Shown here: piece after piece, positions 2,860 to 38,995 of the stretch | Layout: each line of letters begins with the position of its first letter | How positions within the stretch are numbered: the stretch's first letter is position 1 | Assembly: GCA_001642005.1 (NCBI GenBank) | Contig: LWCA01000220.1 | Location: 1 to 38,995, forward strand | DNA from: Intoshia linei | Lineage: Eukaryota; Animalia; Orthonectida | Direction: 5' to 3' | Length of the DNA stretch: 38,995 bases | Made by a program: the position numbers and the translations under genes | The notes under the pieces: generated by a model | Told to the model about the DNA's origin: nothing | Database searches by the model: none | The model's input: only the letters and a program-made list of their open reading frames with translations

Positions 2860-3420
2860 TACAATTTTTTCCGGATGTTAGCAAAATAAATTCCAAACTT
2901 CCAAATTCACATCTTACGGGTCAAAAATCCCAATTGTCCTTTTTTTGTAAATCAAACGAGTTCGAGAATTTTTAAAAATATATACTCTGATACGGATTTT
3001 AAAATGATAAATTTTTTTTTAATAAAAACAGCCCTAGAATTTAAAAAAATTTACAGGTGGTACAGTTGTATCTTGTAAATTTCAATCTGAATAAGTGAAT
3101 CCTTCATGGTCAAGAAAACATTTTAGTATTTATATATATTTTTTCCGAAATATTTTATTAACATGAAACAAAAACTGTGAAATAATTAACGGTCCGAAAA
3201 TTAAAGAAAAAGATAATTTTAGTTGCAATTTTTTGATTTTTCAAAGGTTTTTTTGGACCAAAATCATAAATATGCACACAACTATGCTGTGAATTAGACG
3301 GCGGTCGTTACCCATCAAGGTCAATTTGATATTTTGAATTTGGATAATTTAAAAAAGGTAGAAATGGAATAACCATAATATAAATATATATTCTTCGTTA
3401 CCTTTAAAATTTATGAAATT
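2860..3420 (+). mobile_element. Fragment of Helitron-like dispersed repeat family R1
   Basis: Reverse complement of parts of 10400-10830 and 13560-13800. Contains the recurrent subrepeat (aaaacccagattacccttttt...cctagaattt). A further fragment occupies 1-110. Confidence 0.7.
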
Positions 3421-22516: not shown

Positions 22517-25500
22517 ATGACCAATAAACGTAAAAGAAGTTCCGTAATATAATGAATGTTTAAAATTAGTCATTTATTTAGATTTTAAAATCTAGCAGTA
22601 TATACCAGCCATTTTCTGGTAAATTGGCGAAACAAGTCAGCTTTGCGGAGACATGTCATGTTTTGTATGCTTTAAAATTATTTATTGGGATATTTCATAT
22701 TATTGTATTGTTCCCTAACTTTTCTTGGTAAGTTTTAGTATGAACTAGATTGACTGTTATGTATTTTGTACAAACAGCACCTAGCTCTTGAGAGGGCGGT
22801 CTTTTTTAATTCTACCAAAAAAATAAATTTAATAATAAAATCTTAATTATAAATGCTACTATTATCTACTATCAATCATTTAAACTTTAAAGGCCTTTCA
22901 ATTTTACATTAGTAAAGGATTTGGATTTGACAGAATTGGTAGAAAAAATTTTAATTAGAAGAAACTGATTTTAAAAATTGTGTAAATTTTTTAGCAAATG
23001 TGTTGTACTACAATATCTTTTATGGCAGCGGTTCCCAAATGGGGCTAATTTATTTATATTATTTATAGAAATTATTTTAGGAATAACAGCTCGTCTGATA
23101 CTATGACTCGTAAATTATAGATATTTTTTAAATTCCCAAAAATAATTGAAAATATAAATTAATTTGTAACAATATACTTAATTTTTTAGGTATTTACGTC
23201 TATTTGGTATTTTCTGTGATTTTAGGGTTGCATATTAAATATATGTACGTCCCCATTTCATCAGTTCAATGATTAACGATTTTTGAGATATCCATTTTTG
23301 ATCAAGTAGAGTTTTAACAATTTTATATTTTGTATGTTATATTCGTCATTCTATATCATGTGTTCTTAATTTGGGGTGCCAGAAAATTTTTGGATAAAAA
23401 TCATTTTATAGCTATATTTTTTAATCTTGAATTAAGTTTCCAAATAAATTAAAGACAAAAGGTTAAGAACTCATGTTCTATGCTAAGATGGTCCAAACAT
23501 ATGGCGAGTGAAGATAAAAAAATAAATTTTGTATATTATATATGCTTTTATATTCTGCTATGCTTTTGTTGGATGGACTGTATTAATCTAACGCTAAATA
23601 AACCTTTTTATTTGAAATATACTTTTTAAGTTTGATTCTCCAAAGTTACTAGAGCCGCCTCGAGGCAATTTGGTCCCTAATATTATTTTTTATTCTAATT
23701 TAATTATTTTATTTAATAATAATAGTAGTTGATAAATATTTGATTATTTTATTATAATTTATAGGGAATTTCAGAAAATTGGAAAGGCTGAAAATTCTCC
23801 AGGTTATATTATAAGTTAAGATTAAAGCAACCACTATCCAAAAGTACAAAATATTAAGTACGTTTTAGTGCATTATTAGTAAATTGCTAAAAATTTAATT
23901 TTTGTCAGAAGAGAATGGAATTTGTGATACACTTATAAGTTATTTTAACTTATAGCATGAGTTCTTAACTTTTTTCCACTTAGCAGCCCTTAAATTAAAT
24001 TAAATTCGATTTGGCATCCCCAAAAATGTAATAAACTTAATAATATAATTGCAGTAACAAAACATTACTGGCTGAAATGGCTAAAAATTGCTTTAACTTT
24101 GAATTAGACAAAACACTGTGGTTTTTACGATTTATCAATATCATTTATTTTAGTGTCGTTTAATATTAACCGATTTCATTTTTTTGGTATAAATGCTTAA
24201 AATCAAAAAAGTAGACACCCTAATATACATATTAAAATAGTTACATAATATGTATATCAAAACATTTTAAAAATGGTCTTTTACATCTTGGTTTGCATTT
24301 AAAAATACATCTAGTCCACATGGTACGTCTTTAAAAATATCAAAATTTAAAAACGATGTGACACTCTAATACAGCGGTTCTCAACCTTTTTCAGGTCATA
24401 GCCCAAAAAAGTTTTGCCTAAGATTCCATGTCCCACCTTAAAATATTTACTTTTATTTACAGTATAATAAACTGCTGAAAATCCATCTTATACAAGCCAT
24501 GTTGTAGGAAAAGCAATAATGCTTGGTTGAACATAATCAAACACAATTGGATTTAATTCTATAATTCCCATAAATCCAAATACACCTTACTTTTCTATTC
24601 GTTTTACTATTTCAAACCTTCTTTTAAGTCTAAGAGATTTTGAGTTAGTTCAGGACTGGTTTTATCATTTGGTCCAAAGTTTTGAAGATCTGTAAACCAT
24701 AATTCAAAATTTATATTTTAAATTCATTTGCATTATTAGATTTTGTTTTGGTTAGCAATTTTATGGCTTAATACACCAAATGTTTTTTAATTTTGAAAAT
24801 TTTCTGTGGTCCACGTTGAGAACCCCTGCCGTAATGTAAAATTTATTGAAAAATTTTCTGGCACCCCAGGTTAAGAACTCATGACTTATACTATATGTTT
24901 AACTTATAACGCTATATTGACCATAATGATATTATAGTACAATTGAAATTGTAATAACATACATGTATTACTAATAATATATTTACCAAATATTTTGTAC
25001 ATTTGGAGAGTGGTTGCTCGAATCCAGTGGCTCTCGATTCAAGTAGTGTACGTACTACGGACACCATTTCAAAATATTTATTTTTTTGAACCCCAAAGGA
25101 AATATGAAATTGAAGGTTTTTTCTCATAAGATTTGATAAAATCGGATTTTTCAAAAAAATATTGGAAATAGAGGATATTTTCTTTAAGCGTTGCTAAAAT
25201 TCAATTTTTATTTTGAGGTTAGAATAAGAGGTTTTTCTAAGTTTAATAATATTTGATAAAATTGTGTTTATCAAAAAAATATTGGAAAAAGAGGATTAAA
25301 AGTGATTGTACAGTCATTCTTAACTCTTTTTACAACTTACATTAATTATAATACTATATAATGTAATTATATTGTCTCAATTATTAATAAGTAATTATGT
25401 TTATTTAGCATCATCTATCAATATGAGTAACGTTACACAAAATGATAAAATGAATGATGATAAAGACACAATGCAAAACATTAGTTATGCCGATGATTGC

Positions 25501-28500
25501 GATACACAGAATGGTACTATATCGTCAATATTAATTAATTTATTAATGGAGTAGTCAATGTTCTGGTCACTATGAAAATGAGGTTATTATAGTATTAATA
25601 ATGCTTTAATCCTCAGAATTTGTAAGAAACAAATTTTTTTTTATTCTTTACTTATATAAGATTGAATGTATGTGTTACCGTTTAAATTAGAACAGATTAT
25701 TAACAGTAGAGATTCTTAGAATTAAACAACAGAAAATTCTAATGCAGTTTTCAAGAGTGACGCAATAACGTAACTTTCGTTCTCAGAAATTAAGAGCTGC
25801 AGCGTCAAAAATACAGATTACCTTTTTTTAAAAGAGCCTTAGAAGTTTTGAAAACACAATTTCTTGGACACTTTTTGGAAATAATAATAATCATGAGCAT
25901 TGTCATAAATCAACCAATAAATCAGGGGTTTTCACACTTTTTTTGACGGGCGACGCGTAATCAATTATAAATTATAAAATCAATCGCGGACCATTAAAGA
26001 GAAATACTAGGCAACCTTATAAAAAAATTTAATAAAAATCTTAATACATTATAATTTAATAATATCTTAGTACTTGAATGTAATATAATACGTTATTGAC
26101 TTTTAAGTATTAAATATTTTTTCAAAATTATCTCTCCGACCGGTAAAAATTTTTTACGGACCAGTACTGGTACTATAACCGGCATTTACGAAACGCTGTA
26201 ATAAATCATTGTCATAAACCCGACATTACCCTTTTTTTATAAAATAAAACAGTCCTATAATTTAAAAAAAATCACAATTACATATAGTAGTTATTGCCCT
26301 TTAATATACATTGTATGTTGCTAAATTTTGTAAATATATACAAAAATATTAGACCAAAGCCGTACTTTTGCCTTCCATTATATATTTTTAATGACCAAAA
26401 TATGTGGATATCTTTCTATTATAATATTTTTGTGTTATAGAAATGTCAATCAGTATGATCAATTCTGATTCAAATACCAGTCTCGCTAAAAATGTTGAAT
26501 CGAATAATACGATTAGTTTTACAATGAATGAATTGACTTGCGAACCTAATGAATCTGATTTATGTCCTAAATTATCTGGTGAAGAAAGTAATCGCAGCAT
26601 TTCAATTTTAGATTCTATTTATATAAATAGATCTGATGATTGCAAAGGTACATTAGAGAACGGTGATTTCATGCTTATCAGTTTTTCCATTTTTGTATAC
26701 ATAATATATAAACCAGGGGTTCCCACACTTTTTTCGCGGCGGAATGGTAATAAATTATAAAATATACTGCGGACCATTAAAACAATATTACTAGGGATAA
26801 TTAAAAAAATTTTGATAAAAAATGTACTGAATGGACTTTTAATGAGTAACAATTTTTTCAAAATTTTTCGAAAACCTTTCAAAATTTGGATTGGCATGTG
26901 GGAAACGCTGATGTAAACTGTTTTATAAAACAAGAATGTTCAGAGTCGCAAAATTTTTTCTTTGGATCACTGAACACCCAAAATATGTATGAAATGGTCA
27001 CTTTCCCGTTCATTTAAGGATTTTAGATTTTTTTATTTTTAAAATTTAAAAAGATTTTTAGGGTGTTTTTTCAACCTTGAAATAATATTTTCGTGTCAAA
27101 ATTGTTGATGATTATTTCATTTTTAGATAACGATTACATTGGATATTGGGATATTTTTTATAATATTTTTATCCTTACATTAAAAGTTAATTGAAATTAA
27201 ATTTGTTTTACTAAACTTTGTTAGAATTTTTGTCATTTTTGTATAATATTTTAATATAAAATATAGAATTATCTATGGATTGCAACGTCAGTTTAAATGA
27301 TAACGACTTAGTCAATGTTACTGAAAAAATAAAAAGTGCAAAAAAATCATTTAGCGTTGATGAAAACAATAGTATTGATATGAGTTCCTCTAATGATATA
27401 CCCATGATGCAATTAAATTTTCACGATGTTACTAATATTGGTAACAATAATGGTAAATTTTATTTTTATTTTTTATTTAATATTTGTAATAATTGTTTAT
27501 ATTTTTGATTTACTTGTTTGGATAATATTATTCATCTACCAGATCCTGGTTGTATCTATCGACAATACTAAAAAAATCCACTGATGAGAACAAATTATAA
27601 ATTTGTAAGTTACAATTCTAAATTTAATTTTTGCGACAAACTTTACCTTTGCTGTAAGGTTCGGTTTTATCAAAATTTGAATAAAAAATTTTTCAAATAA
27701 TTTTAAGATTTTGTGATGGTATGAATTTGAAAAGTTTGTTGAATAAACGTTTCCTGATCCGTGCTATTCAATATACTGTTTCGAATCTAGGGGTAAATTT
27801 GAGAACCGTGGTGATAAGTATATGCCCAAGACTAAGATCTTTATTGGCTTAATATTTTTATTTTACAATATAACATTTATTTTTATTTGTAACACTGTAT
27901 TTATGATTTTGGTAATTATTTTTCATCTGTATTTAACATATTTCCGGTCTATTCTTGGTTTTGGGTTCTACAAGGTGGATACGTTAATGTTGTAATTTTT
28001 ATTTTAGACGTCTCAATGAACTGTAATGAAACAAATGATTTTAATAATTTAACTATGATTGCAAGCGATACAATTGAAATTGAAACAAATTCTTTTAACA
28101 TGGATGACAATAAATCTATCGAAATTGGTTGTTCTAATAATGTGTCCATGAAACATTCTTATTCCCAAAATATTTCAAATTGCAATAAAACTAATGGTAT
28201 GATTTTCTCTTTGTTAGTTGCAGGGATTTATCGTTCCTTTATATGAGTTTTTTAAATTTTATTCTCAGAAATTGAGATCTTCAGGACATAAACCTAAATA
28301 CCCATTTTTTCAATGAAAAGAATCCTAGAATTTTAAAATACATACATTTTGGGACAGTTTATAAATAATTTTTAACCTGCAAGAATTTATTATATGCATG
28401 TACTAGATCAGTCATTCTTAACTATGCGTCTCCGCGCATTTGTGTACCAGGAGTACAAGTATTGTTTAGGTGATAGTGGAGTGACCAATGGTCACTGACC

Positions 28501-31500
28501 ACTGAAAACTAGCCTAGTATGTAAGGATTAATATTCTATATACAGGTATATTAAAAAAATGTTTTAGTGACATTTTATTGAGATCTCTATGTTGAGTTAG
28601 TGGTGATGTTATTAGGGACAGTTGGAATTTTTTGTTATATTTTTATTTATATTAAACATTTAATCAACGATATTTAAGCGGAAATATCAATGGTCAGTAT
28701 GGGGAAAAACGAAACTATGCAAATCTCACCAGAAATCAATCATAAATCAAGTAAAGAATGTACTATTCAACAATGTAATACATTCAACGATATCAGCATG
28801 GATGTAGCTGCAAGTGACAGATCTTGTTTTATAAAAAATGAAAATTTCGATATGAAATTATCCTTGATAAATAACGATTCAGGGACTTGTCGCGCTACAA
28901 CTAGTATTGTTTAATAATATAAATAATGTAATAAATAATGATTTTAAAAAATCAATACTAAAGTGAATTTTTGACCGTGAAGGCGTCAATTTATGAAATT
29001 AAATTTTTTTGTGTGGGTTAACTGGAAATAACTATTAGCTGTGATTTTTTTTAAATGTGATACAGTCCAACCCCGGTTTGGGGCAGCAATAATACCATAG
29101 TGCCTCAAATACAGGGGTTTTTGATAAAAATAATTAAGTTCAATGTATAACCGTATATTAGAAGATGGTGATTAGTAATCACTGATTACATCGTTTAAAT
29201 TTTTATATAGATTTGTATTAATAATATATTAATATAGATTCTATTATAATAATTAATATATTCACAATCACAATAATCCAATATATCTGACTCAGATATA
29301 GAATTTTGTACATCAACCATATCTGTAATTTGATCAAAGTCTAAAAATTATGATTACGCTACCGTCAACGTTGAGAACTAGTAATCTAGACAATAACAAT
29401 AATTAAATTCGCATGTTGACCCACACAGCTAGGTCACATGAATATTTCAAGATTTAGACAAGATTAAATATATTTAATATAAAATAATAATTTAATATGA
29501 AAAAGGACACATAGTATATTGTAAACATCAATGATTTTTACTATACAAAAATAATTAAGTAAAATATTATTTATTTTAGTTTTTATTATTTAGTTTTAAA
29601 CATTTTGGATAATTTTCTTTCTGATCATTTACCATTTTTAAATAATTTTGCAATTTCTAATTTACTAGAATAATTTAATTTTAGCATTACAAGAATAAAT
29701 AAATATATTTTTAATTTAATATAACTAGAAATTATATTTTTAATATTTTTTGCCCCAAAACCGGATTAATTTCAAATATACTGCTATGCGATAGCTGTAA
29801 ATTTTAAGAAATTAACATTAAATTAGCAAAGTGCCCCAAAATGCGATGGTGCCCTTCACTAAAAATTTTCCCCAAAACGGGGTCGGACTGTAGTATGAAT
29901 TATAAAAGTTTGTTGAGTTAACGTTATCGGATCTATGCTATTCAATATGCTGTTCCGAATCTATGGGATAGGAATATGGCCATATGACCCAAAATAAGAT
30001 CTTTAATGTCTTCATATTTTTATTTTACCATACTACACGTTTTTGTTTTGATTTGTAACACTGCATTTATGATTTTGATACTTATTTTTTTATCTGAATC
30101 TGGCCTATTTCTGGTATAATCTTGGTTCTGGGGTGTTTATAGGGTGGATAATATCCACGGATATACAGTCGAAATCCTTATTAACGGAATTTTTGTTAGC
30201 GCAAATTCCATATTAACGAAGTTTTAAATTATTTATTGATTTTTTTTAACGAATTTGTATGAACCAAAAATTCCGTTAATAATAATTTTATCTTTAAAGC
30301 TCTAGAATATATTTTTAAGAGAATCATAAATATTATCTCATTTTTTTATCAAATTTCTAATAGATATTAAATTAGATGGCGTTAATTAGAATAATTACTA
30401 TCATTGCGAAAATATCACTTTTAACTAATCATTTATATCTGTAAATAATTTAATATTTATAAAATTTTACATAGACCCCAAAAAACTGATGTGGACACGT
30501 TGATAATGTTTTGTGCATATTAGTTCGTCATGTATTATTTAAAACTCATAATAACAAGAAATATGACCATTTAATGGTTTTTATTTAAAAAATTAAATTC
30601 CGTTAACTGTGGTGTTACTATGGGGAAAATTCCATATTAACGGAATTACGGAATTCTCAATTCCATTAATAAGGACTTAGACTATATTAATGTTGTTAAT
30701 TTTTATTTTAGACGTCTCAATGAACTGTAATGAAACAAATTCTTTTAACATGGATGACAAATCTATCCAAATTAGTTGCTTTAATAATATGTCTATGAAA
30801 GATTCCTATTCCCAAAATATTTCAAATTGTAATAAAACTAATGGTATTATTTTCTCTTTTGTATTGCAGGATGCATCGTTTCTTTATATGGGTTTTTTAA
30901 ATTGATATCAGGAAATTGAGACCTTCATAATAAAAACCTAAATACTATTATTTTAAATTAAAATAATTGTAGAATTTAAAAATACATAAATTATGGGACA
31001 GTTTTAGAATAATTTTTAATCTGCAAGACTTTATCACATAAATTTTATAGATCAGTTATTTTTAACCAATGCACCACAAATAAAATAGTCAAATCTCACC
31101 AACCACAGATATCCCAGTTAAAAACTAATATAAAATGTACTAATATTGTCAAAATATATTTTTTTATTATTATTATTGTTGTTTTTTCTTATCAAATTTA
31201 CATTTTACAGGTGCATCCTGTAGTAAAAAAGGTTAAGAAACATTTCTCTAGGCAGAATTTCTTAACGGGGTGCTAGAAAAAATATTTTTATTATTTAAAT
31301 ATTTACTAACTCATTTTATTTATTTGCATTTTGTTAAGTGAATTTATCCTTCACTTATATAAAATTGAATGTCTGTGTGTGTGTTACCTTTTATTTAAAA
31401 AATTGACTGTCATAGAATTAAAAAACCCAATTTCTAATACAGTTTTTGCTAGAGCTTGTTTTTATTTATTTTTTAGTTATCAGATTTGAGTGATTCAGGG

Positions 31501-34500
31501 CCAAAATCCCAATTTCTCTTTTTGTTTAAAAAATAAATCAGCCAAAAAATTTAATAAAACATACATGGTGGACGCGTTTTAAAATCATTAACATTTTGGT
31601 AAATCTCAGCCTCAGAAACACATACTTTCATGGTAAAATCCTTAAATTACCCTTTGTTTTAAAAAGTAAACATGTCCTAAAATTTTATAAAAAATAAATT
31701 CTGGAATAATTTTTAAAATCATAAGCATTATGATAAATGGAAACATAAAAAAGTTTAAAGAAGTTTAAGGGTTTTTAAAATATTTAACAATCTTTTAAGG
31801 TTTGGAGTAAAATCACACCTTTGGAGGTGACTATTATAATACTCATATTAATTAATTAAAATTTACAGCACAGGATTTCTTATTATGTATTATTTAACTA
31901 TAATTTAAAAAATATTCTGTTGCCATGAAATTATTGTCCACACACCCTGTGAGAAAAGTCACTCTAAGCCACTGCTACATAACAATCTACCTAGTATCTT
32001 ATAAAATACAGTTTTTATGTTCATTTTTTACAATTTATTGATGTTATTTATTAATTTCGATATTAATAGGGTGGTTTTTTTAAATGGCAATAAAATACGA
32101 TTTTTACGTTGAATTATAAGATAACATTATTTATTTTTCACAGGGGTACTGGAAATAATAGATGTGGCTAACGGAAATTTCTAAATTTTCTAAATTTAAA
32201 AAAGTCTAATAAACCTGCACTAGGCATAAAATTTTAGAGAATCTTATGTCATACATATTAGATCGATATAATCATTGATTTTGCTAATTAATCATATTAT
32301 TGATTTTTTGATCAAATTTTTGTGGGTTAGTTTAATTAATTTTTTTCTATATTATATAAAACATTTTTTATATTTTTCGTATTCAAATTTTAAAGATTTT
32401 AAAGCAAATATTGTAGGGTTTTTAAGGCAACATTTTTTTATATATTTTTTTAAAAATTTTCAAGATTTCTAATTGAGATATTTACGTCAAGTTAATGTTG
32501 ATGTCATGAGCTAGGGTTGTAATTTGTTGTTATATTTTTATTTAAACATTTCATGAACAATATTTAAGCGGAAATATCAATGGTGAGTATGGGGGAAAAC
32601 GAAACTATGCAAATTTTACCAGCAATCAATCATAAATCAAGTAAAGAATGTACTGTTCAAAAATCTAATATGTACAACGACATGAGTATGGATGTATCTA
32701 CAAGTGACAAATCTTGTTTTATAAAAGATGAAAGTGTCGATATGAAATTATCCTTGAGAAATAACAATTCAGGGACTTGTCACTCTATGATTGGTAATGT
32801 TTAATAAAATATTTAGCAATTTAAAAAAATCAATACTAATTTAATTTTTTGACCGTCAATGCTTAAATTTATGCAATTAAATTTTTAGTGTGGGTTTAAC
32901 TGAAAATAACTATTAGCTGTGATTTTTTTAAAATGTAAAATTTAAAAAAAGGGTAATATTTTCATTTTACCATATTACAAGTTATAATATTATGATTTTT
33001 AACATAGAATTTATAATTGTGATTTTATTTTTTATTTAAATCTGCCTATTTCTGGTCTATTATTGGTTCTGGGTGTTTATAAGGTGAATACACTAATGTT
33101 GTTAATTTTTATTTTAGATGTTTCAATGAACTGTAATGAAACAAATGATTTAAATAATTTAACTATGATTGCAAGCGATAAAATTGAAATTGAAACAAAT
33201 TCTTTTAACGTGGATGACAAATCTATTAAAATTAGTTGCTCTAATGATATTTCCATAAAACATTCCTATTCCCAAAATATTTCAAATTGCAGTAAAACTA
33301 ATGGTATGCTTTTCTCTTTTTTAGTTGCAGGGATTTATTGTTCCTTTATATGAGTTTTTTTAAATTTGATTCTCTGAAATTGAAGCCTTCAAGGTCGAAA
33401 CGTAAATGATTCTTTTTTTAAATGAAAAAATCGTAGAATTTTAAAAGAAATAAATTCTGGTACAATTTTAAAATAATTTTTAACTGCAAGAATTTATGAC
33501 ATCCACCTTTAAATCATTGATTCTTAACCGTCGCGTCCGGCACATTTGTGCTTCATGAGTAGTGTTATTATTATCAAAATTTAAGATAGACCCTGAAGTT
33601 AAAAAGATTAAGAAACACTGCTCTACAGCGATATTAATTTGAACGATGTATTGTTGGAGCATTAAATATCTTACACATTAGACTATAAAGCTTAGAGCGA
33701 CATAATCATCGATTTTGCTAATTAATCATATTATTGATTTTTTTACCAAATTTTGTGGGTTTCTTTAAGTAAACATTTTTTTGTTTAAATTTTGAATAGT
33801 TTTTAAGGCAAAATTTTATCACCAATTCTTTAAAGATTTTCAATTTATTTTTGCAACCAAAATTTGATGGGGTTTTAAGGCAATATTTATCAGTTTACCA
33901 GAAATTGCCCAAAGATGTGCCATAATATAATTCAAATTTGCCCAAGAGTGTGCCGTAATATTGTCAAATTCTAGTGGCCCTAGAGAGGAGCTGTGATATA
34001 TGTAAATTGTTGTTTGTATATTTAATTTTGTGTTATATATCTTATGCTATCATGTTAATCATCTTTGATGTATAGAGTTAACAAGTCCTGCTATATATAA
34101 TAATAATGCAATTATATTAGAATATTAATATTATTATCTATGCATGTATCTTTTATATACAATTATATTCAAAAAAATATTACTGATCTCTAATTGGCAT
34201 TTTTACCCCAATTTAGTAGTGATGTTAGGAAGAAGGGTTGTTATATTTATATGTAAACATTTAATGAACAATATTTAAGCGGAAATATCAATGGTTAGTA
34301 TGGGGAAAAACGAAACTGTGCAAATTTCACCAGCAATCAAACATAAATCAAGTAAAGAATGTACTGTTCAACAATCTAATATAGTCACCGACATCAGCAT
34401 GGATGTATCTACAGGTGATAGATCTTGTTTTATACAAGATGAAAGTGTCGATATGAAATTATCCTTGAGAAATAATGATTCAGGGACTATTCACGCTACG

Positions 34501-37500
34501 AATGGTATTTTTAATTAAAACAGTTACCAAATAAAAAAATTTATAGACTAAGGTTTTGATGGTTGAGTCGAGTTATATTTTTATTTGTCATAAAAAATAT
34601 TAAATGTGAAAATACAGTCAGATTTTAATTTTAGAGTACATTGAACGTTATATCGAATAGATCAGGCATTGTCAACTTTTTTTCGCTGTGGAACCTAAAA
34701 AAAATTGTATACATTACATCTTTTGTTTATATAAAATGTAATGTGTGTGGGTTACTCTTTATTTAAAAACCCTGTTTCTAATACATTTTTTCACGAGTAA
34801 TACAGCATCGAAAATTTCAGTGACAGTATTTGTATTATATCTGACTACATTTATTATTACACATAAATAAAACTAATTAATGAATTGATAAAACACTTTT
34901 TAACAATATGGCCAGGGCCGTGAAAAGGTCTATAGAGGACATATGACTAGGGTCTACAATCATGAGGGCCTACTTTTTTAATTTTTGTTATGTTGGAAAA
35001 TTTCTTAAGTATACTAAAATTTCGATAATAAATTTGATTTCCAACGGTTATTTTTAATTTTTAGATAATGAACGATCGATTAGCAATTTTTATAGGTCCA
35101 TAAAATTTCCATCTGACAAGGGCTTATTGTTGACTCTCTACGAGCCTGGATATGGTAAATCCCATAAAATTGAATGGTACACTGTAATGTCCCCACCAAG
35201 AGACCATATGACGTGTCTACTATTTTAAATTGACAAATTATAGAAAAAAAGTTTGGAAATCGTTAGATGAAACGATACATAGTGGAACCAAAATTTTTTT
35301 AGTGATCTCTAATTGATATATTTACGTCAAGTTAATGTTGATTTCATGAGCTAGGGTTGTAATTTGTTGTTATATTTTTATTTAAACATTTAATGAACAA
35401 TATTTAAGCGGAAATATCAATTGTCAGTATGGGGAAAAACAAAACTGTGCAAATTTCACCAGCAATCAATCATAAATCAAGTAAAGAATGTACTGTTCAA
35501 AAATCTAATATGTACAACGACATGAGTATGGATGTATCTACAAGTGACAAATCTTGTTTTATAAAAGATGAAAGTGTCGATATGAAATTATCATTGAGAA
35601 ATAACGATTCAGGGACTTGTCGCGCTACGATTGGTATTGTTTAATAAAATAGTTAGCAATTTAAAAAAATCAATACTAATTTAATTTTTTGACCGTGAAT
35701 GATCCAATTTATACAATTAAATTTTTTTGTGGGTTAACTGGAATGACTTAACTGATTTTTTTAAAATACTTGTAATTTTTTTATTTGTTAAATTGTATGA
35801 GATCTACAATTTCCATCTGGCTGAGCCTACTTCTCGCCCTCCACGGCCCTGTACATACCCAGTGTGTACTAATCCTAATTTTTAGAATTTTTAACCGCCA
35901 ATATACCTTATTTTTTTACTTATCATAAAAAGGTTAGTTGATAATTTTATGAAATTTTTAATATTATAAAACCAAAAATAAGTATATTAGGATAATAAAA
36001 CTAGGTTTGACAAAAATTTGAACAGATTAATAAAAACTAATTAATTTTTTGAATTATTTCAGTAGTTTAATTTTTTATATTAGACACAGCCAAATATGAT
36101 AATTTTATCAACGATACTATTGTTTTGAAAAAACTTAAAAAAACTGATGATTGCTCAAATATATTTAATGGTTAATTATTTCCATGTTTCGCGCATCTTT
36201 ATTAGAAATTTAGAATCATATGTAAGGAATGATGCTTCTATTATGAATGTTTCAAATATTGATAAAACTCGGATTTTCAAAGAAACTTTTTTAAAGTATT
36301 ATTGATATAACTGTGTCCTGTACTCACCGGTCCCCAATAAAATGTGAAAATTTAAAAATGTAATGTATACTAGTTTTAACTGGATTTTCCTTTGTTTTTA
36401 TTTAATATAATAATATTTTATTATTTTATTTTTGCAATATTGAGTTAATTTTATAGTTTCGTCATTGGGCCCAATTTTTTTGAAAAATTTTGTATTTTTA
36501 AGTTAAGGAAGAATTAAGTTTATTTGAAAAGTTAAGTTTACACACTTCAACCTTAAAACGGTACTAATAGTAAAAATATCTTTTAACCAATTAGACCAAT
36601 TGAATCAATTAATGAAACAAAAATAAATACCTTTGTTAATGAAAATGCAGAAATTTCTCATAGTAATTTTTATTCAAATATTATAAATGTATTATAATTT
36701 ATAATACATTAAATTATTAAATAGCAGTGAGTTGATTGCATCGCAATTAATTGAATAATTATGGAGTAACCCACAATCTTTTTAATTCAATGACATAAAA
36801 AATCATATAGAATAGATTGAATTGGGTCGCACATGGGAATTGTGAAAAAAGTCAAACTAAGAATAAGATTTAGTGACATTTAATTTACAATTATAATTTT
36901 AATTTATTCAAATTTCGGTTAATTTCTGAGATTAATAATCGTAAGACGGAAAAATTTTGAAATAAAAATGTTTATCTTTTTTTAATAAGCTTTTAAATTG
37001 AGATTGCATTTATCCACATATTACTGTTATTTTACACCATACGCCCAGTAGGTATTACTTTGCGTATCACTGGTATAATGGTTATAATTTGCGTTTGTAG
37101 AAGTTGAAAACGAATCTGAATTAGACATTACAAATCTAGGTATATTATATAAATTGTGAATTATTTAATTGATTAATAGATTTACCAACTTTGCATGAAT
37201 TAATGACACCAAAATGTTCAAGAATTAAAACCCGTAATTTATTAAATATTCATTATATAATTGTATAAAATTTATCTAGCAAGGCCAGATAAAATGGGTC
37301 ACTACTAATTTTTATTTGTTACATTTAATTTTATATTATTGTCGATCAATTTTTTTATTTGTCAACAATTTGAAAATATCCTCTGCATGTTTTTTATGGT
37401 TAGGGATAATTGATTACAAATATTAAATAACAACTGATTAGATTAAATTCTTTTTGTACAATGTTTTATTTACCCGGTATTTAAGTTCTCGATGCAAAAA

Positions 37501-38418
37501 TACTTTTGATTATAAGAAAAAATTAGCGTTAATTATTAGATTGATTTATATTGTTGAATTTTAGGTTTTTTATTGAATTCCTATACTAATCAAGATAACA
37601 TTTCAGATGGTTACTGTTTTGAAAATATAAAGTTTGATGAACCCGATATAACTGATGAATTAATTCTAGAAGCAGAAAATCGGAGTATTATTTATTTTTT
37701 ATTCGTTACATATTAAATTTTTAGTCAAGTATAAATTCGACGCGATTTCAAACATTCGTTCTTATGATGGTATAATTATAATTAAATAGTTAACAATTTT
37801 TGATTTGTCGTATATTTTTTTTTATTTATTTATAGTTGAACAATTTTTTTCCACTAAATATTTGGATACTGATGTTATTAGCATCCCAGAAGTTTTATTC
37901 ATTCCTGAACATAGTCATGTTTGTATTATTATTTATTTTAGTGTATTATTTTATTGCATTATTATCAATTTTAGCTGATGGAATCACTTCCAAATTTTTA
38001 CGAATTTGAAGACGATTATATTGATAATTATGAAAAGAAATGGTGATTTTTTAATTTGTCAATTTTCAATTCTATATTAGTCTTGAAAATTATAACGAAA
38101 TTATTCAAATTGTTGAAAATGAAATGATAAAACATGAACAAATTTACAATAAAAGAATTCAAATTGAACAAGACATTAAACTTGATGAAGAACATTTGAT
38201 GCAAGGTTAATTAATTTTTATTTTATTATTAATTTAATATTTTATTTTAATATTTAATACTGAATTTATTGTATTTTAAAATCAACTGTTTATTATATAT
38301 ATGTACAATTATTTTTGTTATTTTTTAGCAATTGAAAAGGTAGAAAAATTGAAACTTAATGGTGAAAATTTATTGCGTGATATATATGCGGCTAGAGAAA
38401 ATGTATTCAATATTGAAG
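22517..38418 (+). CDS. KNL1: Kinetochore scaffold KNL1/Spc105 orthologue, 3'-incomplete (~982 aa in window). Exons: 22517-22543, 22582-22664, 23765-23802, 25409-25513, 26441-26662, 27267-27452, 28008-28196, 28679-28903, 30712-30843, 32569-32793, 33118-33303, 34280-34504, 35409-35633, 36084-36170, 36214-36295, 36595-36662, 37101-37139, 37180-37233, 37280-37297, 37565-37684, 37725-37769, 37836-37918, 37975-38042, 38081-38205, 38329-38418
   Basis: The spliced N-terminus MTNKRKRSS|ILKSSSIYQPFSGKLAKQVSFAETCHVL|EFQK carries SILK and RVxF-type motifs in KNL1 order. The long Ser/Asn/Asp/Met-rich middle has MELT-like sites (DMSMDVST, DKSCFIKDESVDMKLS, ELDIT, DKTRIF). Later exons encode YEKKCLENYNEIIQIVENEM..AIEKVEKLKLNGENLL, a coiled coil like the start of the Spc7 region. 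All 25 exons chain in one open frame with GT-AG ends. Exons between 36295 and 37565 are least certain. Confidence 0.85.
22745..22883 (-). mobile_element. 3'-terminal fragment of R1 in KNL1 intron 2
   Basis: ctagattgactgttatgta..gcacctagctct..taccaaaaaaataaatt matches 14558-14690; ends CTAG|T on the minus strand. Confidence 0.6.
23357..23475. mobile_element. Short hAT-type MITE (119 bp)
   Basis: CATGTGTTCTTAA ... TTAAGAACTCATG with 8-bp flanks ttctatat/ttctatgc. Confidence 0.65.
23956..24883. mobile_element. hAT-type non-autonomous element (928 bp) containing a nested MITE
   Basis: Perfect 14-bp TIR CATGAGTTCTTAAC/GTTAAGAACTCATG; 8-bp TSD acttatag/acttatac. Confidence 0.8.
24372..24828. mobile_element. 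hAT (Charlie/MER5-like termini) MITE nested in 23956-24883
   Basis: CAGCGGTTCTCAAC ... GTTGAGAACCCCTG; degenerate 8-bp TSD ctctaata/ccgtaatg. Confidence 0.7.
25923..26198. mobile_element. hAT-type MITE
   Basis: CAGGGGTTTTC ... CGAAACGCTG with TSD caataaat/taataaat. Interior shared with 26714-26910. Confidence 0.7.
26714..26910. mobile_element. hAT-type MITE
   Basis: CAGGGGTTCCCACA ... TGTGGGAAACGCTG with TSD atataaac/atgtaaac. Similar single termini at ~3751, 4574, 6222, 23026 and 34663. Confidence 0.75.
29063..29890. mobile_element. Tc1/mariner-superfamily MITE (828 bp)
   Basis: TA|CAGTCCAACCCCGGTTTGGGG ... CCCCAAAACGGGGTCGGACTG|TA. The empty site is in the paralogous intron (tgtgatggtatgaatt, ~27712-27727). 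Confidence 0.88.
30166..30684. mobile_element. Tc1/mariner-superfamily (Tigger-like) MITE (519 bp)
   Basis: TA|CAGTCGAAATCCTTATTAACGGAATT ... AATTCCATTAATAAGGACTTAGACTA|TA, with internal ttaacggaatt/aattccgttaa repeats. Absent from the paralogous introns before X1 and X3. Confidence 0.85.
31347..31745 (+). mobile_element. 5' fragment of an R1-related Helitron-like repeat
   Basis: A|TCCTTCACTTATATAAAATTGAATGTCTGTGTGTGTG followed by R1 subrepeats; similar starts at ~25645 and ~34719. Confidence 0.55.
34913..35148. mobile_element. hAT-type MITE (CAGGGCCG termini)
   Basis: CAGGGCCGTG ... CTACGAGCCTG with flanks aatatggc/gatatggt. A related right end (ccacggccctg) lies at ~35840-35851. Confidence 0.55.
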
Positions 38419-38995
38419 GTTTGTTGATTTTTTTTTAATTTAATTTGTTAGTTTATTTTTATCTATACATATAGTTAGTTTATATTTTTTCAAGAAAATT
38501 TTACATTATAGTTTACTTTATATGATTATACAGTTTTCTCTCTACAAATCGCTATTTAGTAACTCGCCACGAGTTTTTTCTTTGCTATAGAAATGTTGCC
38601 ATTTTCTACAACTTGCCATCCATTTAATTAAACACATTTTATCAACACCGAGGAGCAATATATGAAAAATTTCTGATTAAACCTTTTTCCAAAATGAACA
38701 TTTAAAAAATTATTTTTAATATCATAACTGTCTAGTTCTGGAACGTGCAGGGGTGGCTATCAGCTGTATGACTTTACCGATCGTTTTAAATTTTTTTAGT
38801 GTCTATTTTTAAGATTCTGTCTCGATTATCGTAGGTTTGGATTTGCCTTTAGGTGACTTAGATACACAAATATTAACGTCATAATTGATCACTATTTTTT
38901 TTAAAAATATGATGGTTAGGGGTGTGAATTTTTTCAAATTATTGCGAAAATACAAAAGTGCCACCCCATACGTGGAAGATGGGGTTGAATGATAC

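What the first reader, a model, noticed from the sequence alone, without database searches (positions are those of the whole stretch)
25409..36170. KNL1 checkpoint-signalling array built from duplicated, frame-symmetric cassette exons
Seen: eleven consecutive exons (105, 222, 186, 189, 225, 132, 225, 186, 225, 225, 87 nt) all have lengths divisible by 3 and phase 1 at both ends. Eight belong to two homologous types in the order X0 X1 Y1 X2 Y2 X3 Y3 Y4, each in its own TE-filled intron context. Known: KNL1 MELT repeats are Mps1-phosphorylated Bub3-Bub1 docking sites whose number influences checkpoint signalling, and in human most lie in one very large exon. Inference: here the array grows by exon duplication, and any exon can be skipped in frame. 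The number of Bub-docking modules could therefore be tuned by alternative splicing, e.g. mitosis vs meiosis or life stage.
Basis: partly seen in the sequence, partly recalled or inferred. Interest (0 to 1): 0.85.

Follow-up and report, generated by a model that had tools for sequence, protein, structure and literature searches.

The report
Exon-per-repeat KNL1 array in Intoshia
In the tiny parasitic worm Intoshia linei, the repeat region of a probable KNL1 kinetochore-scaffold gene consists of eight duplicated exons of two types, and transcripts splice all of them together with no sign of exon skipping.

Summary
Window 25409-36170 (a whole Intoshia linei contig) carries eleven AG..GT-bounded exons. 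All have lengths divisible by 3 and phase 1 at both ends.

- **Families:** eight exons form two families, X (27267, 28008, 30712, 33118) and Y (28679, 32569, 34280, 35409). Neither occurs elsewhere in the genome.
- **Splicing:** spliced contigs from two public runs join them in genomic order: X0>X1>Y1>X2>Y2>X3>Y3>Y4>87-nt exon>next exon.
- **Origin:** homology runs 100-260 nt into the flanking introns. It defines a ~1.3-kb X-Y block present three times, plus a lone Y. The array therefore grew by tandem duplication of exon-plus-intron blocks.
- **Identity:** the gene (public record: hypothetical protein OAF69854.1) is probably KNL1. It starts MTNKRKRSS|ILK...KQVSFAET, with the same first-exon boundary as fly Spc105R-B. 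Y2-Y4 carry MELT-like SMDVST, X carries T-x-x-F, and the C-terminus models as a long helix. No homology or profile search confirms this, and the RWD end lies off the contig.
- **Tuning by splicing:** no exon-skipping junction was seen, and junction contigs have similar depth. The idea is unsupported.

This is a lineage-specific variant of known KNL1 repeat evolution, of moderate interest.

The parts
22517..22543 (+). Coding exon 1, MTNKRKRSS. It is followed by a 38-nt intron (22544-22581) that splits the SILK motif.
   Evidence: Read directly and mapped from public protein P0001. The first-exon boundary is the same as in fly Spc105R-B, MNANKRRSS|LRK.
22582..22727 (+). Exon 2, ILKSSS...KQVSFAETCHV (the rest of SILK, plus an RVxF-type motif). 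The 3' end is uncertain: the donor is either 22727|GTAAGT (annotated) or 22664|GTATGC. Both are in frame with exon 3.
   Evidence: The last 63 nt are 52% T. They either encode a 21-aa hydrophobic stretch or are intron.
23765..23802 (+). Exon 3 (38 nt). It shifts the phase from 2 to 1. It comes from the public model only.
   Evidence: Not checked with reads.
25409..25513 (+). 105-nt phase 1-1 exon, not homologous to X or Y.
   Evidence: Its junctions were not seen directly.
26441..26662 (+). 222-nt phase 1-1 exon (207 nt if the annotated donor at 26647 is used). It carries SFTMNE but is not significantly similar to X.
27267..27452 (+). X0 (186 nt), the diverged X-type exon.
   Evidence: The X0>X1 junction appears in a loose end of a 1165-nt contig.
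28008..28196 (+). X1 (189 nt). It has two ETN[DS]F motifs and SFNMDD.
   Evidence: Its transcript contig is recognised by the AAT insertion and about 14 differences from X3.
28679..28903 (+). Y1 (225 nt). Its MELT-like core is degenerate (SMDVAA).
   Evidence: The Y1>X2 junction contig is recognised by 17 mismatches to Y4 and the AACTA tail.
30712..30843 (+). X2 (132 nt). This is an X exon with a 54-nt in-frame deletion between two copies of GAAACAAAT.
   Evidence: The 30842>32568 joint is.
32569..32793 (+). Y2 (225 nt), with SMDVST.
   Evidence: Joints 30842>32568 and 32792>33117 are.
33118..33303 (+). X3 (186 nt).
   Evidence: A contig with 0 mismatches spans Y2>X3>Y3.
34280..34504 (+). Y3 (225 nt), with SMDVST.
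   Evidence: Joints 33302>34279 and 34503>35408 are.
35409..35633 (+). Y4 (225 nt), with SMDVST. It is 95% identical to Y2.
   Evidence: Joints 34503>35408 and 35632>36083 are.
36084..36170 (+). 87-nt phase 1-1 exon, followed by a 43-nt intron.
   Evidence: The joint 35632>36083 and a loose end matching 36214 onward are.
36214..36295 (+). Next exon (82 nt, phase 1>2). It ends the run of symmetric exons.
   Evidence: Its start is supported by RNA. Its end comes from the public model.
27719..29058 (+). X-Y duplication block 1: flank, X1, a 482-nt intron, Y1, flank.
   Evidence: Self-BLAST.
29893..32936 (+). X-Y duplication block 2 (X2, Y2), enlarged by later repeat insertions at 30163-30690 and 31346-31752.
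32954..34539 (+). X-Y duplication block 3 (X3, Y3), lying head-to-tail after block 2.
35290..35767 (+). Lone Y block (Y4), 93% identical to the Y2 block over 471 nt. This is either a recent duplication or gene conversion.
35065..35154 (+). A 90-nt exon present in the public model only. It overlaps a dispersed repeat with at least 40 copies and is not used in the transcript contigs.
   Evidence: The direct Y3>Y4 joint has full depth in both runs.
38081..38417 (+). The last two annotated exons, which encode the start of a long helix (P0001 residues 942-1015). The gene then runs off the contig.

Best explanation
This is the middle, probably disordered repeat region of the Intoshia linei orthologue of the kinetochore scaffold KNL1/Spc105. 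The gene is in public records only as a partial hypothetical protein.

The region was built by tandem duplication of a ~1.3-kb genomic block. The block holds two phase 1-1 exons: X (~62 aa, T-x-x-F and SF.[MV]D[DE] motifs) and Y (75 aa, MELT-like SMDVST core). The present layout is X0 (X1 Y1)(X2 Y2)(X3 Y3) Y4.

Because the introns were copied along with the exons, every module stayed a separate in-frame exon. Later, dispersed repeats were inserted into the introns, one X exon lost 54 nt between short direct repeats, and Y2/Y4 were duplicated or homogenised recently.

The exons are spliced constitutively, in genomic order.

Shown: the exon structure, the splicing order, the block duplication, and lineage specificity.

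Inferred: KNL1 identity; that phosphorylated Y motifs dock Bub3; and that X motifs contact the TPR of the Bub1/Mad3-family protein, as in other animals.
For: - **Exons and phases:**
- **Transcript junctions at the predicted boundaries, in two runs:** depths are 1404-1798 in X1 (907 for Y4>e87) and 161-215 in X2. The paralogue assignments were checked.
- **Duplication:** the X and Y exons are unique to this contig. Block homology includes the intron flanks. Exons are 88-95% identical against 67-97% for flanks.
- **Post-duplication changes:** repeat insertions at 29371-29840, 30163-30690, 31346-31752 and 34960-35100.
- **N-terminus:** MTNKRKRSS|ILKSSS...KQVSFAET, with a basic patch, SILK and an RVxF-type motif. 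Fly Spc105R-B starts MNANKRRSS|LRK, with an isoform-specific first nine residues followed by RISF (PMC11321039).
- **MELT-like motifs:** strict M[DE][ILVM][ST] occurs 3 times, all at the same Y position, against 0.32 expected.
- **Precedent:** KNL1 arrays are known to evolve by lineage-specific block duplication and to carry T-omega (T-x-x-aromatic)/TF motifs beside MELT, with weak purifying selection at dN/dS 0.55 in primates (PMC4558858; PMC10996584). Here dN/dS is 0.44-1.09.
- **Structure models:** there is no confident fold in the Y unit (pLDDT 41.7). The protein ends in a single 74-residue helix, modelled at low confidence.
- **Partner:** a Bub1/Mad3-family gene with a KEN box, a TPR (56.7 bits) and an ABBA-like motif exists in the genome.
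Against: - No search confirms KNL1 identity. The following all returned nothing but the protein itself: Pfam on the exons and on P0001, the Pfam MELT, Spc7 and Knl1_RWD_C models on the genome, PDB sequences, the 5.8-billion and 1.84-billion protein libraries and the ESM Atlas.
- The diagnostic C-terminal RWD domain cannot be examined because the contig ends.
- Only three strict MELT-like motifs exist, and Y1 has lost its phospho-acceptor.
- dN/dS near 1 in Y allows neutral drift.
- The public model has a 21-aa hydrophobic stretch after KQVSFAET that would not fit KNL1, unless it is intron.
- The joints e105>222-nt exon>X0 were not seen.
- Contigs drop rare isoforms, so 'constitutive' means only that there is no major alternative form.
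Confidence: 0.65

Rival explanations
1. One reading: the symmetric exons are cassette exons, and the number of Bub-docking modules is tuned by skipping them, for example between mitosis and meiosis or between life stages.
For: All eleven exons are 3n and phase 1-1, so any skip stays in frame. The array introns are 324-1808 nt long in a genome whose median intron is 57 bp, which leaves room for regulation. The public model contains a further in-frame 90-nt exon between Y3 and Y4, so at least one optional exon is conceivable.
Against: The best-supported joints in two runs are only the consecutive ones, at similar depth. The single apparent skip (33302>35408) belongs to the contig carrying the X1-specific AAT insertion, so it is X1>Y1 laid on the wrong copy. 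The phase symmetry is a precondition for surviving tandem exon duplication and is not a sign of regulated skipping.
Confidence: 0.1
2. The gene is not KNL1. It is a lineage-specific repeat protein, either another PP1-binding scaffold or a membrane-anchored, Asn/Ser/Cys-rich glycoprotein of the parasite. In the second case the short basic N-terminal tail happens to resemble KNL1.
For: There is no detectable homology to any KNL1. The public model has a 21-aa hydrophobic segment, modelled as a helix at residues 28-51. Each module has three conserved Cys and many N-x-S/T sites. Phase 1-1 exon modules are classic for extracellular domains (established knowledge). Contig depth is high, at 1400-1800.
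Against: The N-terminal match to fly Spc105R-B covers both the residues and the exon boundary, and it is followed by KQVSFAET. An alternative in-frame donor (22664|GTATGC, the same intronic sequence as the RNA-confirmed X3 donor) removes the hydrophobic stretch, which is 52% T like the introns. No confident fold is predicted. The protein ends in a long helix, as expected before the KNL1 RWD domain. There is no signal peptide.
Confidence: 0.15
3. The gene is KNL1, but most X/Y modules are neutral or decaying filler rather than working Bub-docking sites. The array then reflects duplication and drift only.
For: dN/dS is 0.75-1.09 among Y copies. Y1 lost the S/T of its motif. X2 lost 18 aa. The RNA samples differ from the reference by two non-synonymous changes in X2, M>I within SFNMDD and N>D. 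In human and yeast only a fraction of MELT repeats are active (PMC7292645).
Against: 47 of 74 Y columns are invariant, including SMDV, SCFI and DMKLSL. Exons are better conserved than their flanks. All copies keep open frames and splice sites.
Confidence: 0.25

Closest known systems
KNL1/Spc105 MELT-repeat arrays evolving by block duplication (Tromer, Snel & Kops 2015, PMC4558858)
   Same: A lineage-specific array in the N-terminal half of the protein. It shows duplication of multi-repeat blocks, recent near-identical copies (Y2/Y4), decayed and truncated units, a MELT-like core plus extra motifs including conserved Cys, and weak constraint.
   Different: Here every module is a separate phase 1-1 exon, and the duplicated unit is a genomic block containing introns. 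That paper does not mention exons, and no held paper pairs KNL1 with exon duplication. Only three strict MELT-like motifs are present.
C. elegans KNL-1 two-motif docking: TF motifs for the BUB-1 TPR and MELT motifs for BUB-3 (PMC10996584)
   Same: There are two kinds of short motifs. X has an acidic T-x-x-F and Y has M-D-V-S. A Bub1/Mad3-family TPR gene is present in the genome.
   Different: The worm consensus is [D/N]-[D/E]-T-phi-x-phi-F, with F at +4. X has F at +3 and shows no match to that consensus. Binding was not tested here. The motifs sit in separate exons about 75 residues apart.
Drosophila Spc105R isoform B (PMC11321039)
   Same: The N-terminus is MNANKRRSS|LRK...RISF against MTNKRKRSS|ILK...KQVSF. 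In both species the first nine residues are a separate coding exon. Both have few MELT-like motifs, a second lineage-specific repeat type and a C-terminal coiled coil.
   Different: The known fly alternative splicing concerns the first exon, not the repeats. The fly central repeats (ExxEED) are unrelated in sequence to X and Y.
Human KNL1 (CASC5)
   Same: SILK/RVSF, then an array of Bub-docking repeats, then a coiled coil and RWD domain.
   Different: Most human repeats lie in one very large exon. The human T-omega-MELT-SHT unit spans about 25 aa, whereas Intoshia has 62-75-aa exon modules.
Tandem exon duplication of symmetric (phase 1-1) exons (classical exon-duplication and exon-shuffling principle; established knowledge)
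   Same: Homologous neighbouring exons with the same phase and 3n length, with homology continuing into the introns.
   Different: The principle is usually described for folded extracellular modules or for mutually exclusive exons. Here it applies to a probably disordered intracellular signalling array that is spliced in full.

Membership tests
KNL1/Spc105/Spc7 | A PP1-docking pair, SILK then RVxF, close to the N-terminus, next to a basic patch. | tested here: met
   KRKRSSILK at residues 4-12 and KQVSF at residues 26-30. One SILK was found against 0.08 expected, and one RVxF against 0.33 expected, in shuffles.
KNL1/Spc105/Spc7 | An N-terminal sequence and first-exon boundary shared with a characterised orthologue. 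| tested here: met
   MTNKRKRSS|ILK against fly Spc105R-B MNANKRRSS|LRK, whose first nine residues are isoform-specific (PMC11321039). The comparison was made with sequence quoted in a paper, not by an alignment tool.
KNL1/Spc105/Spc7 | A repeat array carrying the MELT-like motif M[DE][ILVM][ST]. | tested here: met
   SMDVST occurs at the same position in Y2, Y3 and Y4 (3 found, 0.32 expected). Y1 has SMDVAA.
KNL1/Spc105/Spc7 | A match to the Pfam MELT repeat model PF19221. | tested here: not met
   There was no match in P0001 at E<=10 or in the genome. The model has 26 positions, and it rang in no control genome either.
KNL1/Spc105/Spc7 | A C-terminal coiled coil followed by tandem RWD domains (PF18210), or the Spc7 domain (PF08317). 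| tested here: inconclusive
   The contig ends inside the gene. The last 74 modelled residues form a single low-confidence helix. PF18210 gave no six-frame hit in the genome, and PF08317 gave only one weak hit (14.7 bits, below cut-off) in an unrelated long ORF on another contig. Exons at this end of the gene are only 39-125 nt, so absence is not shown.
KNL1/Spc105/Spc7 | Detectable sequence homology to named KNL1 proteins. | tested here: not met
   Only the protein itself was found. There was no PDB hit.
KNL1/Spc105/Spc7 | Phospho-dependent binding of Bub3-Bub1 to the repeats, and localisation at kinetochores. | not testable with these tools
   The Bub1/Mad3 TPR is split over three exons, and no Bub3 sequence was available by reference. 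No complex job was sent.
Alternatively spliced cassette-exon array | Neighbouring homologous exons with 3n length and the same phase at both ends. | tested here: met
Alternatively spliced cassette-exon array | Transcripts that lack individual exons. | tested here: not met
   Only consecutive joints were found among the best-supported joints in two runs. The apparent Y3 skip is explained as X1>Y1. Only contigs were available, so rare isoforms are not excluded.
Tandem segmental (exon-plus-intron) duplication | Homology that continues from the exons into the flanking introns, with units lying head-to-tail. | tested here: met
   Blocks 27719-29058, 29893-32936, 32954-34539 and 35290-35767. Flank identity is 67-97%.

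The most novel reading that the evidence does not exclude
Individual X or Y exons are skipped at low level, or only in particular stages (plasmodium, embryos, male or female adults, meiosis). Intoshia would then adjust the number of Bub-docking modules on KNL1 by splicing. This would be a mode of checkpoint tuning not described for any KNL1.
Probability: 0.08. Interest if true: 0.7.

Novelty: new variant of a known kind. Interest (0 to 1): 0.4.

Why it matters
KNL1 repeat arrays are a textbook case of rapid, lineage-specific repeat turnover, usually explained by unequal crossover within one coding exon. This locus shows the same turnover working through a different substrate: whole exon-plus-intron blocks, in a compact genome whose introns are normally about 57 bp.

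It gives a concrete, RNA-supported gene structure for an unnamed, very divergent kinetochore gene of an orthonectid. It also corrects the public model, which has one unsupported exon overlapping a dispersed repeat and perhaps two wrong donors.

The layout separates a T-x-x-F module and a MELT-like module into independently duplicable exons. This could be used to test how the two motif types cooperate.

The more exciting idea, tuning of checkpoint strength by exon skipping, has no support so far.

Tried and rejected
- **Pfam on single exons and on P0001.** Only weak hits were found. CBF_beta reaches 26.9 bits summed over three stretches, and single Y exons on their own give no CBF_beta hit. I take it as an artefact.
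- **Pfam Knl1_RWD_C, Spc7, MELT and Mad3_BUB1_II on the whole genome.** Knl1_RWD_C, MELT and Mad3_BUB1_II gave no hit. Spc7 gave only one hit below cut-off (14.7 bits), in an unrelated long ORF.
- **Y-exon profile against 1.84 billion representatives.** It returned only P0001 plus two low-complexity chance hits.
- **P0001, whole and N-terminal 42 aa, against 5.8 billion proteins.** Only the protein itself was found. One search was a parameter slip.
- **PDB sequence search** and **ESM Atlas**: nothing.
- **X versus Y homology.** Not significant: hhalign E=0.15, BLASTP E=0.14, shuffle z mostly below 2.5.
- **The 222-nt exon as an X member.** Rejected, with z below 0.
- **Apparent Y3-skipping joint 33302>35408 and the 'goes back' joint 35628>30712.** Both are contigs of X1>Y1 and Y1>X2 laid on paralogues inside the 6-kb stretch.
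- **C3240 hit to the Bub1 TPR model.** It is a SYF1/XAB2-like HAT-repeat ORF and not Bub1.
- **AlphaFold2 of the Y alignment and of P0001.** Confidence was low (pLDDT 41.7 and 32.3), so neither a fold nor disorder is shown.
- **Composition test of the hydrophobic part of exon 2.** It cannot separate a T-rich intron from transmembrane-type coding sequence.
- **Bacterial promoter scan**. Irrelevant to this eukaryotic gene.
- **Complex prediction.** Not run, because neither partner could be given as an unaltered single reference.
- **Joined model.** I did not build or search a joined spliced model of my own. Whole-protein searches used the public protein P0001 by id. That protein includes the unsupported 90-nt exon and possibly 21 intronic codons.

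Full report
**Source.** The window is one complete contig (C2814, 38,995 bp) of a 41.6-Mb assembly in 3,520 contigs. A profile of the four Y exons, searched against 1.84 billion protein representatives, retrieved one real hit, P0001. This is NCBI OAF69854.1, 'hypothetical protein A3Q56_02409, partial [Intoshia linei]', 1022 aa, encoded on a 38,995-bp contig. The organism is therefore the orthonectid Intoshia linei, and the gene is public but unnamed. The scan had noted this same stretch (s1-787678) and the N-terminus (s1-787729) on this window, not on other DNA.

**The observation.** A scan for AG..GT-bounded intervals of the stated lengths in an open phase-1 frame recovered all eleven exons at unique, sensible positions. 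They are 25409-25513, 26441-26662, 27267-27452, 28008-28196, 28679-28903, 30712-30843, 32569-32793, 33118-33303, 34280-34504, 35409-35633 and 36084-36170.

- The four 225-nt Y exons are 88-95% identical in DNA. 47 of 74 residues are invariant.
- X1, X2 and X3 (189, 132 and 186 nt) are 90-93% identical.
- X0 (27267) is related to them at protein level only (z=7.3). The 222-nt exon is not related (z below 0).
- X and Y are not demonstrably related to each other.
- Neither family occurs anywhere else in the genome.
- X2 is an X exon that lost 54 nt between two copies of GAAACAAAT.

**Transcripts.** The only two runs that hold the stretch have no library record. Their contigs, laid on 30200-36199, contain exact GT..AG joints:

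- 30842>32568 (X2>Y2)
- 32792>33117 (Y2>X3)
- 33302>34279 (X3>Y3)
- 34503>35408 (Y3>Y4)
- 35632>36083 (Y4>87-nt exon)
- a loose end after 36170 that equals the sequence from 36214, so the intron there is 43 nt

The X and Y exons have no other genomic copy, so these joined forms are cDNA.

Three odd rows in that output are contigs of exons lying outside the laid stretch.

- A 'goes back' joint, 35628>30712, has 17 mismatches and the bridging letters AACTA. This is exactly Y1, which has 17 differences from Y4 over that range and the tail AACTA. It is joined to X2.
- A contig with 14 differences and an AAT insertion after 33218 is X1. Upstream it carries the end of X0 (GTTACTAATATTGGTAACAATAATG). 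Downstream it carries the start of a Y exon.
- The same AAT-bearing contig accounts for the apparent skip 33302>35408. The first 86 nt of Y1 are 94% identical to Y2, Y3 and Y4.

The chain X0>X1>Y1>X2>Y2>X3>Y3>Y4>e87>next exon is thus supported in both runs. Junction-contig depths are 1404-1798 in X1 (907 for Y4>e87) and 161-215 in X2. No skip is among the best-supported joints. Contigs drop rare variants, so this shows only that there is no major alternative isoform. The joints e105>222-nt exon>X0 were not seen directly, because only one call of at most 6 kb was allowed.

**The public model.** P0001 maps onto 25 exons with canonical sites. It contains all eleven exons, with three differences or doubts.

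- It ends the 222-nt exon 15 nt earlier (26647|GTACAT, giving 207 nt).
- It inserts a 90-nt phase 1-1 exon, 35065-35154, between Y3 and Y4. This exon overlaps a dispersed repeat with at least 40 copies. It is bypassed by the full-depth Y3>Y4 joint.
- Its exon 2 runs to 22727 and encodes 21 hydrophobic residues. An in-frame alternative donor, 22664|GTATGC, would remove them. That stretch is 52% T, outside the range of this gene's exons, but a transmembrane-type segment would look the same.

The run of phase 1-1 exons begins after exon 3 (phase 2>1) and ends at 36214-36295 (phase 1>2).

**How the array arose.** Self-comparison shows that homology extends well beyond the exons.

- 27850-28455 matches 32954-33561 (617 nt, 83%).
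- 28081-28422 matches 30731-31066.
- The Y blocks run from about 100-165 nt upstream to about 150 nt downstream of each exon.
- 27719-27981 matches 29893-30150.

This defines an X-Y unit of about 1.34 kb (27719-29058). It recurs as 29893-32936 and, immediately head-to-tail, as 32954-34539. A lone Y block follows at 35290-35767.

The introns therefore predate the duplications. The array grew by tandem duplication of exon-plus-intron blocks, which only phase-symmetric 3n exons can survive.

The blocks were later enlarged by insertions of dispersed repeats at 29371-29840, 30163-30690 and 31346-31752, each with many copies at 80-85% identity elsewhere. Some flank segments, for example 28946-29056, themselves resemble dispersed elements and could have served as substrates for unequal recombination. 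This last point is inference.

Y2 and Y4 are 93% identical over 471 nt, with a 97% identical upstream flank. That indicates a recent duplication or gene conversion.

Array introns are 324-1808 nt. The introns in the 3' part of the gene are 38-66 nt in several cases, and the species' median is 57 bp (PMC6543705).

**Selection.** Exons (88-95%) are better conserved than their 100-nt flanks (67-82%, apart from Y2/Y4). However, dN/dS is 0.75-1.09 among Y copies and 0.44 for X1/X3, on few synonymous sites. Primate KNL1 repeats show 0.55 (PMC4558858). The RNA samples differ from the reference by two non-synonymous changes in X2, M>I in SFNMDD and N>D. Constraint is therefore weak and probably limited to short motifs.

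**What the gene is.** The N-terminus reads MTNKRKRSS|ILKSSSIYQPFSGKLAKQVSFAETCHV, with a 38-nt intron at the bar. That gives a basic patch, SILK and an RVxF-type motif, which is the PP1-docking arrangement of KNL1.

Fly Spc105R-B begins MNANKRRSS|LRK. Its first nine residues come from an isoform-specific exon, and RISF follows (PMC11321039). The residues and the exon boundary match closely. I take this as the strongest evidence of orthology.

- The strict MELT-like pattern M[DE][ILVM][ST] occurs three times (0.32 expected), always as SMDVST at the same place in Y2-Y4. Y1 has SMDVAA.
- X exons carry E-T-N-S-F (T-x-x-aromatic, the T-omega type) followed by [MV]-D-[DE]. The SF.[MV][DN][DE] core is shared by all X exons and by the 222-nt exon (5 found, 0.02 expected).
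- Separate T-omega/TF and MELT motifs, conserved Cys, block duplication, truncated units and homogenisation are all described for KNL1 arrays.
- The genome encodes a Bub1/Mad3-family protein with a KEN box, a TPR (56.7 bits, above cut-off) and an ABBA-like FNIYKDE.
- Structure models are of low confidence. They show no fold in the array and a single 74-residue helix at the truncated C-terminus.

Against this, no profile, homology or structure-database search recognises KNL1, and the RWD end lies off the contig. I put KNL1 identity at about 0.8, and the whole best explanation at 0.65.

Exons were searched singly by reference, and whole-protein searches used the public protein P0001 by id. No complex prediction was sent, because the Bub1/Mad3 TPR is split over three exons and no Bub3 sequence could be given by reference.

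**Verdict.** The structure is real and RNA-supported. The exon-duplication origin is well supported, and the KNL1 assignment is probable. Tuning by alternative splicing has no support.

Compared with what is known, this is the familiar lineage-specific turnover of KNL1 repeats, realised through duplicated exon-plus-intron blocks. I found no paper describing that layout. It is a new variant of a known kind, of moderate interest.

Noticed in passing
window 35065-35154: The public gene model (OAF69854.1) contains a 90-nt in-frame exon between Y3 and Y4. It overlaps a dispersed repeat with at least 40 genomic copies and is bypassed by the full-depth Y3>Y4 transcript joint. It is probably a mis-annotation, or at most a rare exonised repeat.
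   Followed up: yes
window 22665-22727: Exon 2 of the public model ends with 21 hydrophobic codons in a stretch that is 52% T. An in-frame alternative donor at 22664 (GTATGC, the same as the confirmed X3 donor) would remove them. Which donor is used decides whether the protein has a transmembrane-like segment.
   Followed up: partly
window 38916-38995: The contig ends in an ~80-bp element with at least 40 copies at 87-96% identity across the assembly. This probably explains why the assembly breaks inside the gene.
   Followed up: partly
window 31346-31752: A ~410-bp dispersed element in the X2-Y2 intron has at least 30 copies at 80-84% identity. In other contigs, a ~110-bp piece like 28946-29056 often lies next to it in inverted orientation. 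It may be a non-autonomous transposon family.
   Followed up: no
L004 (G000:C381:22752-25973), ORFs at 1302-1481, 1558-1779, 2635-2835, 2949-3152: A Bub1/Mad3-family gene. It has a KEN box (INKENIEPLKRGR), a TPR domain split over exons (Pfam Mad3_BUB1_I, 56.7 bits) and an ABBA-like FNIYKDE. No GLEBS domain was found by Pfam.
   Followed up: partly
window 36084-36170: The 87-nt exon encodes KYDNFINDTIVLKKLKK. This loosely resembles the vertebrate KNL1 KI motifs (K-I-D-x-x-x-F-[IL]-x-x-L-K, recalled from memory). It was not tested.
   Followed up: no
P0001 residues ~390-450 and two further stretches: Pfam CBF_beta passes its cut-off (26.9 against 25 bits) only by summing three weak stretches; single Y exons on their own give no hit. 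The precomputed PF02312 label on this protein is probably an artefact.
   Followed up: partly
window 30752 and 30786: Both transcript data sets differ from the reference in X2 by G>A (M>I in SFNMDD) and A>G (N>D). Both changes are non-synonymous and are probably strain polymorphism.
   Followed up: partly
window 34280-34504 versus flanks (all Y pairs): Synonymous divergence between Y exons (0.10-0.16) is lower than the divergence of their intron flanks (about 0.2-0.4), although dN/dS is near 1. This could reflect exon-limited gene conversion or nucleotide-level constraint. The number of synonymous sites is small.
   Followed up: no
L006 (G000:C3240:48230-51613), ORF 562-2487: A 641-aa single-exon ORF with HAT/TPR-like repeats, resembling the splicing factor SYF1/XAB2. 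It gave a weak false hit to the Bub1 TPR model.
   Followed up: no
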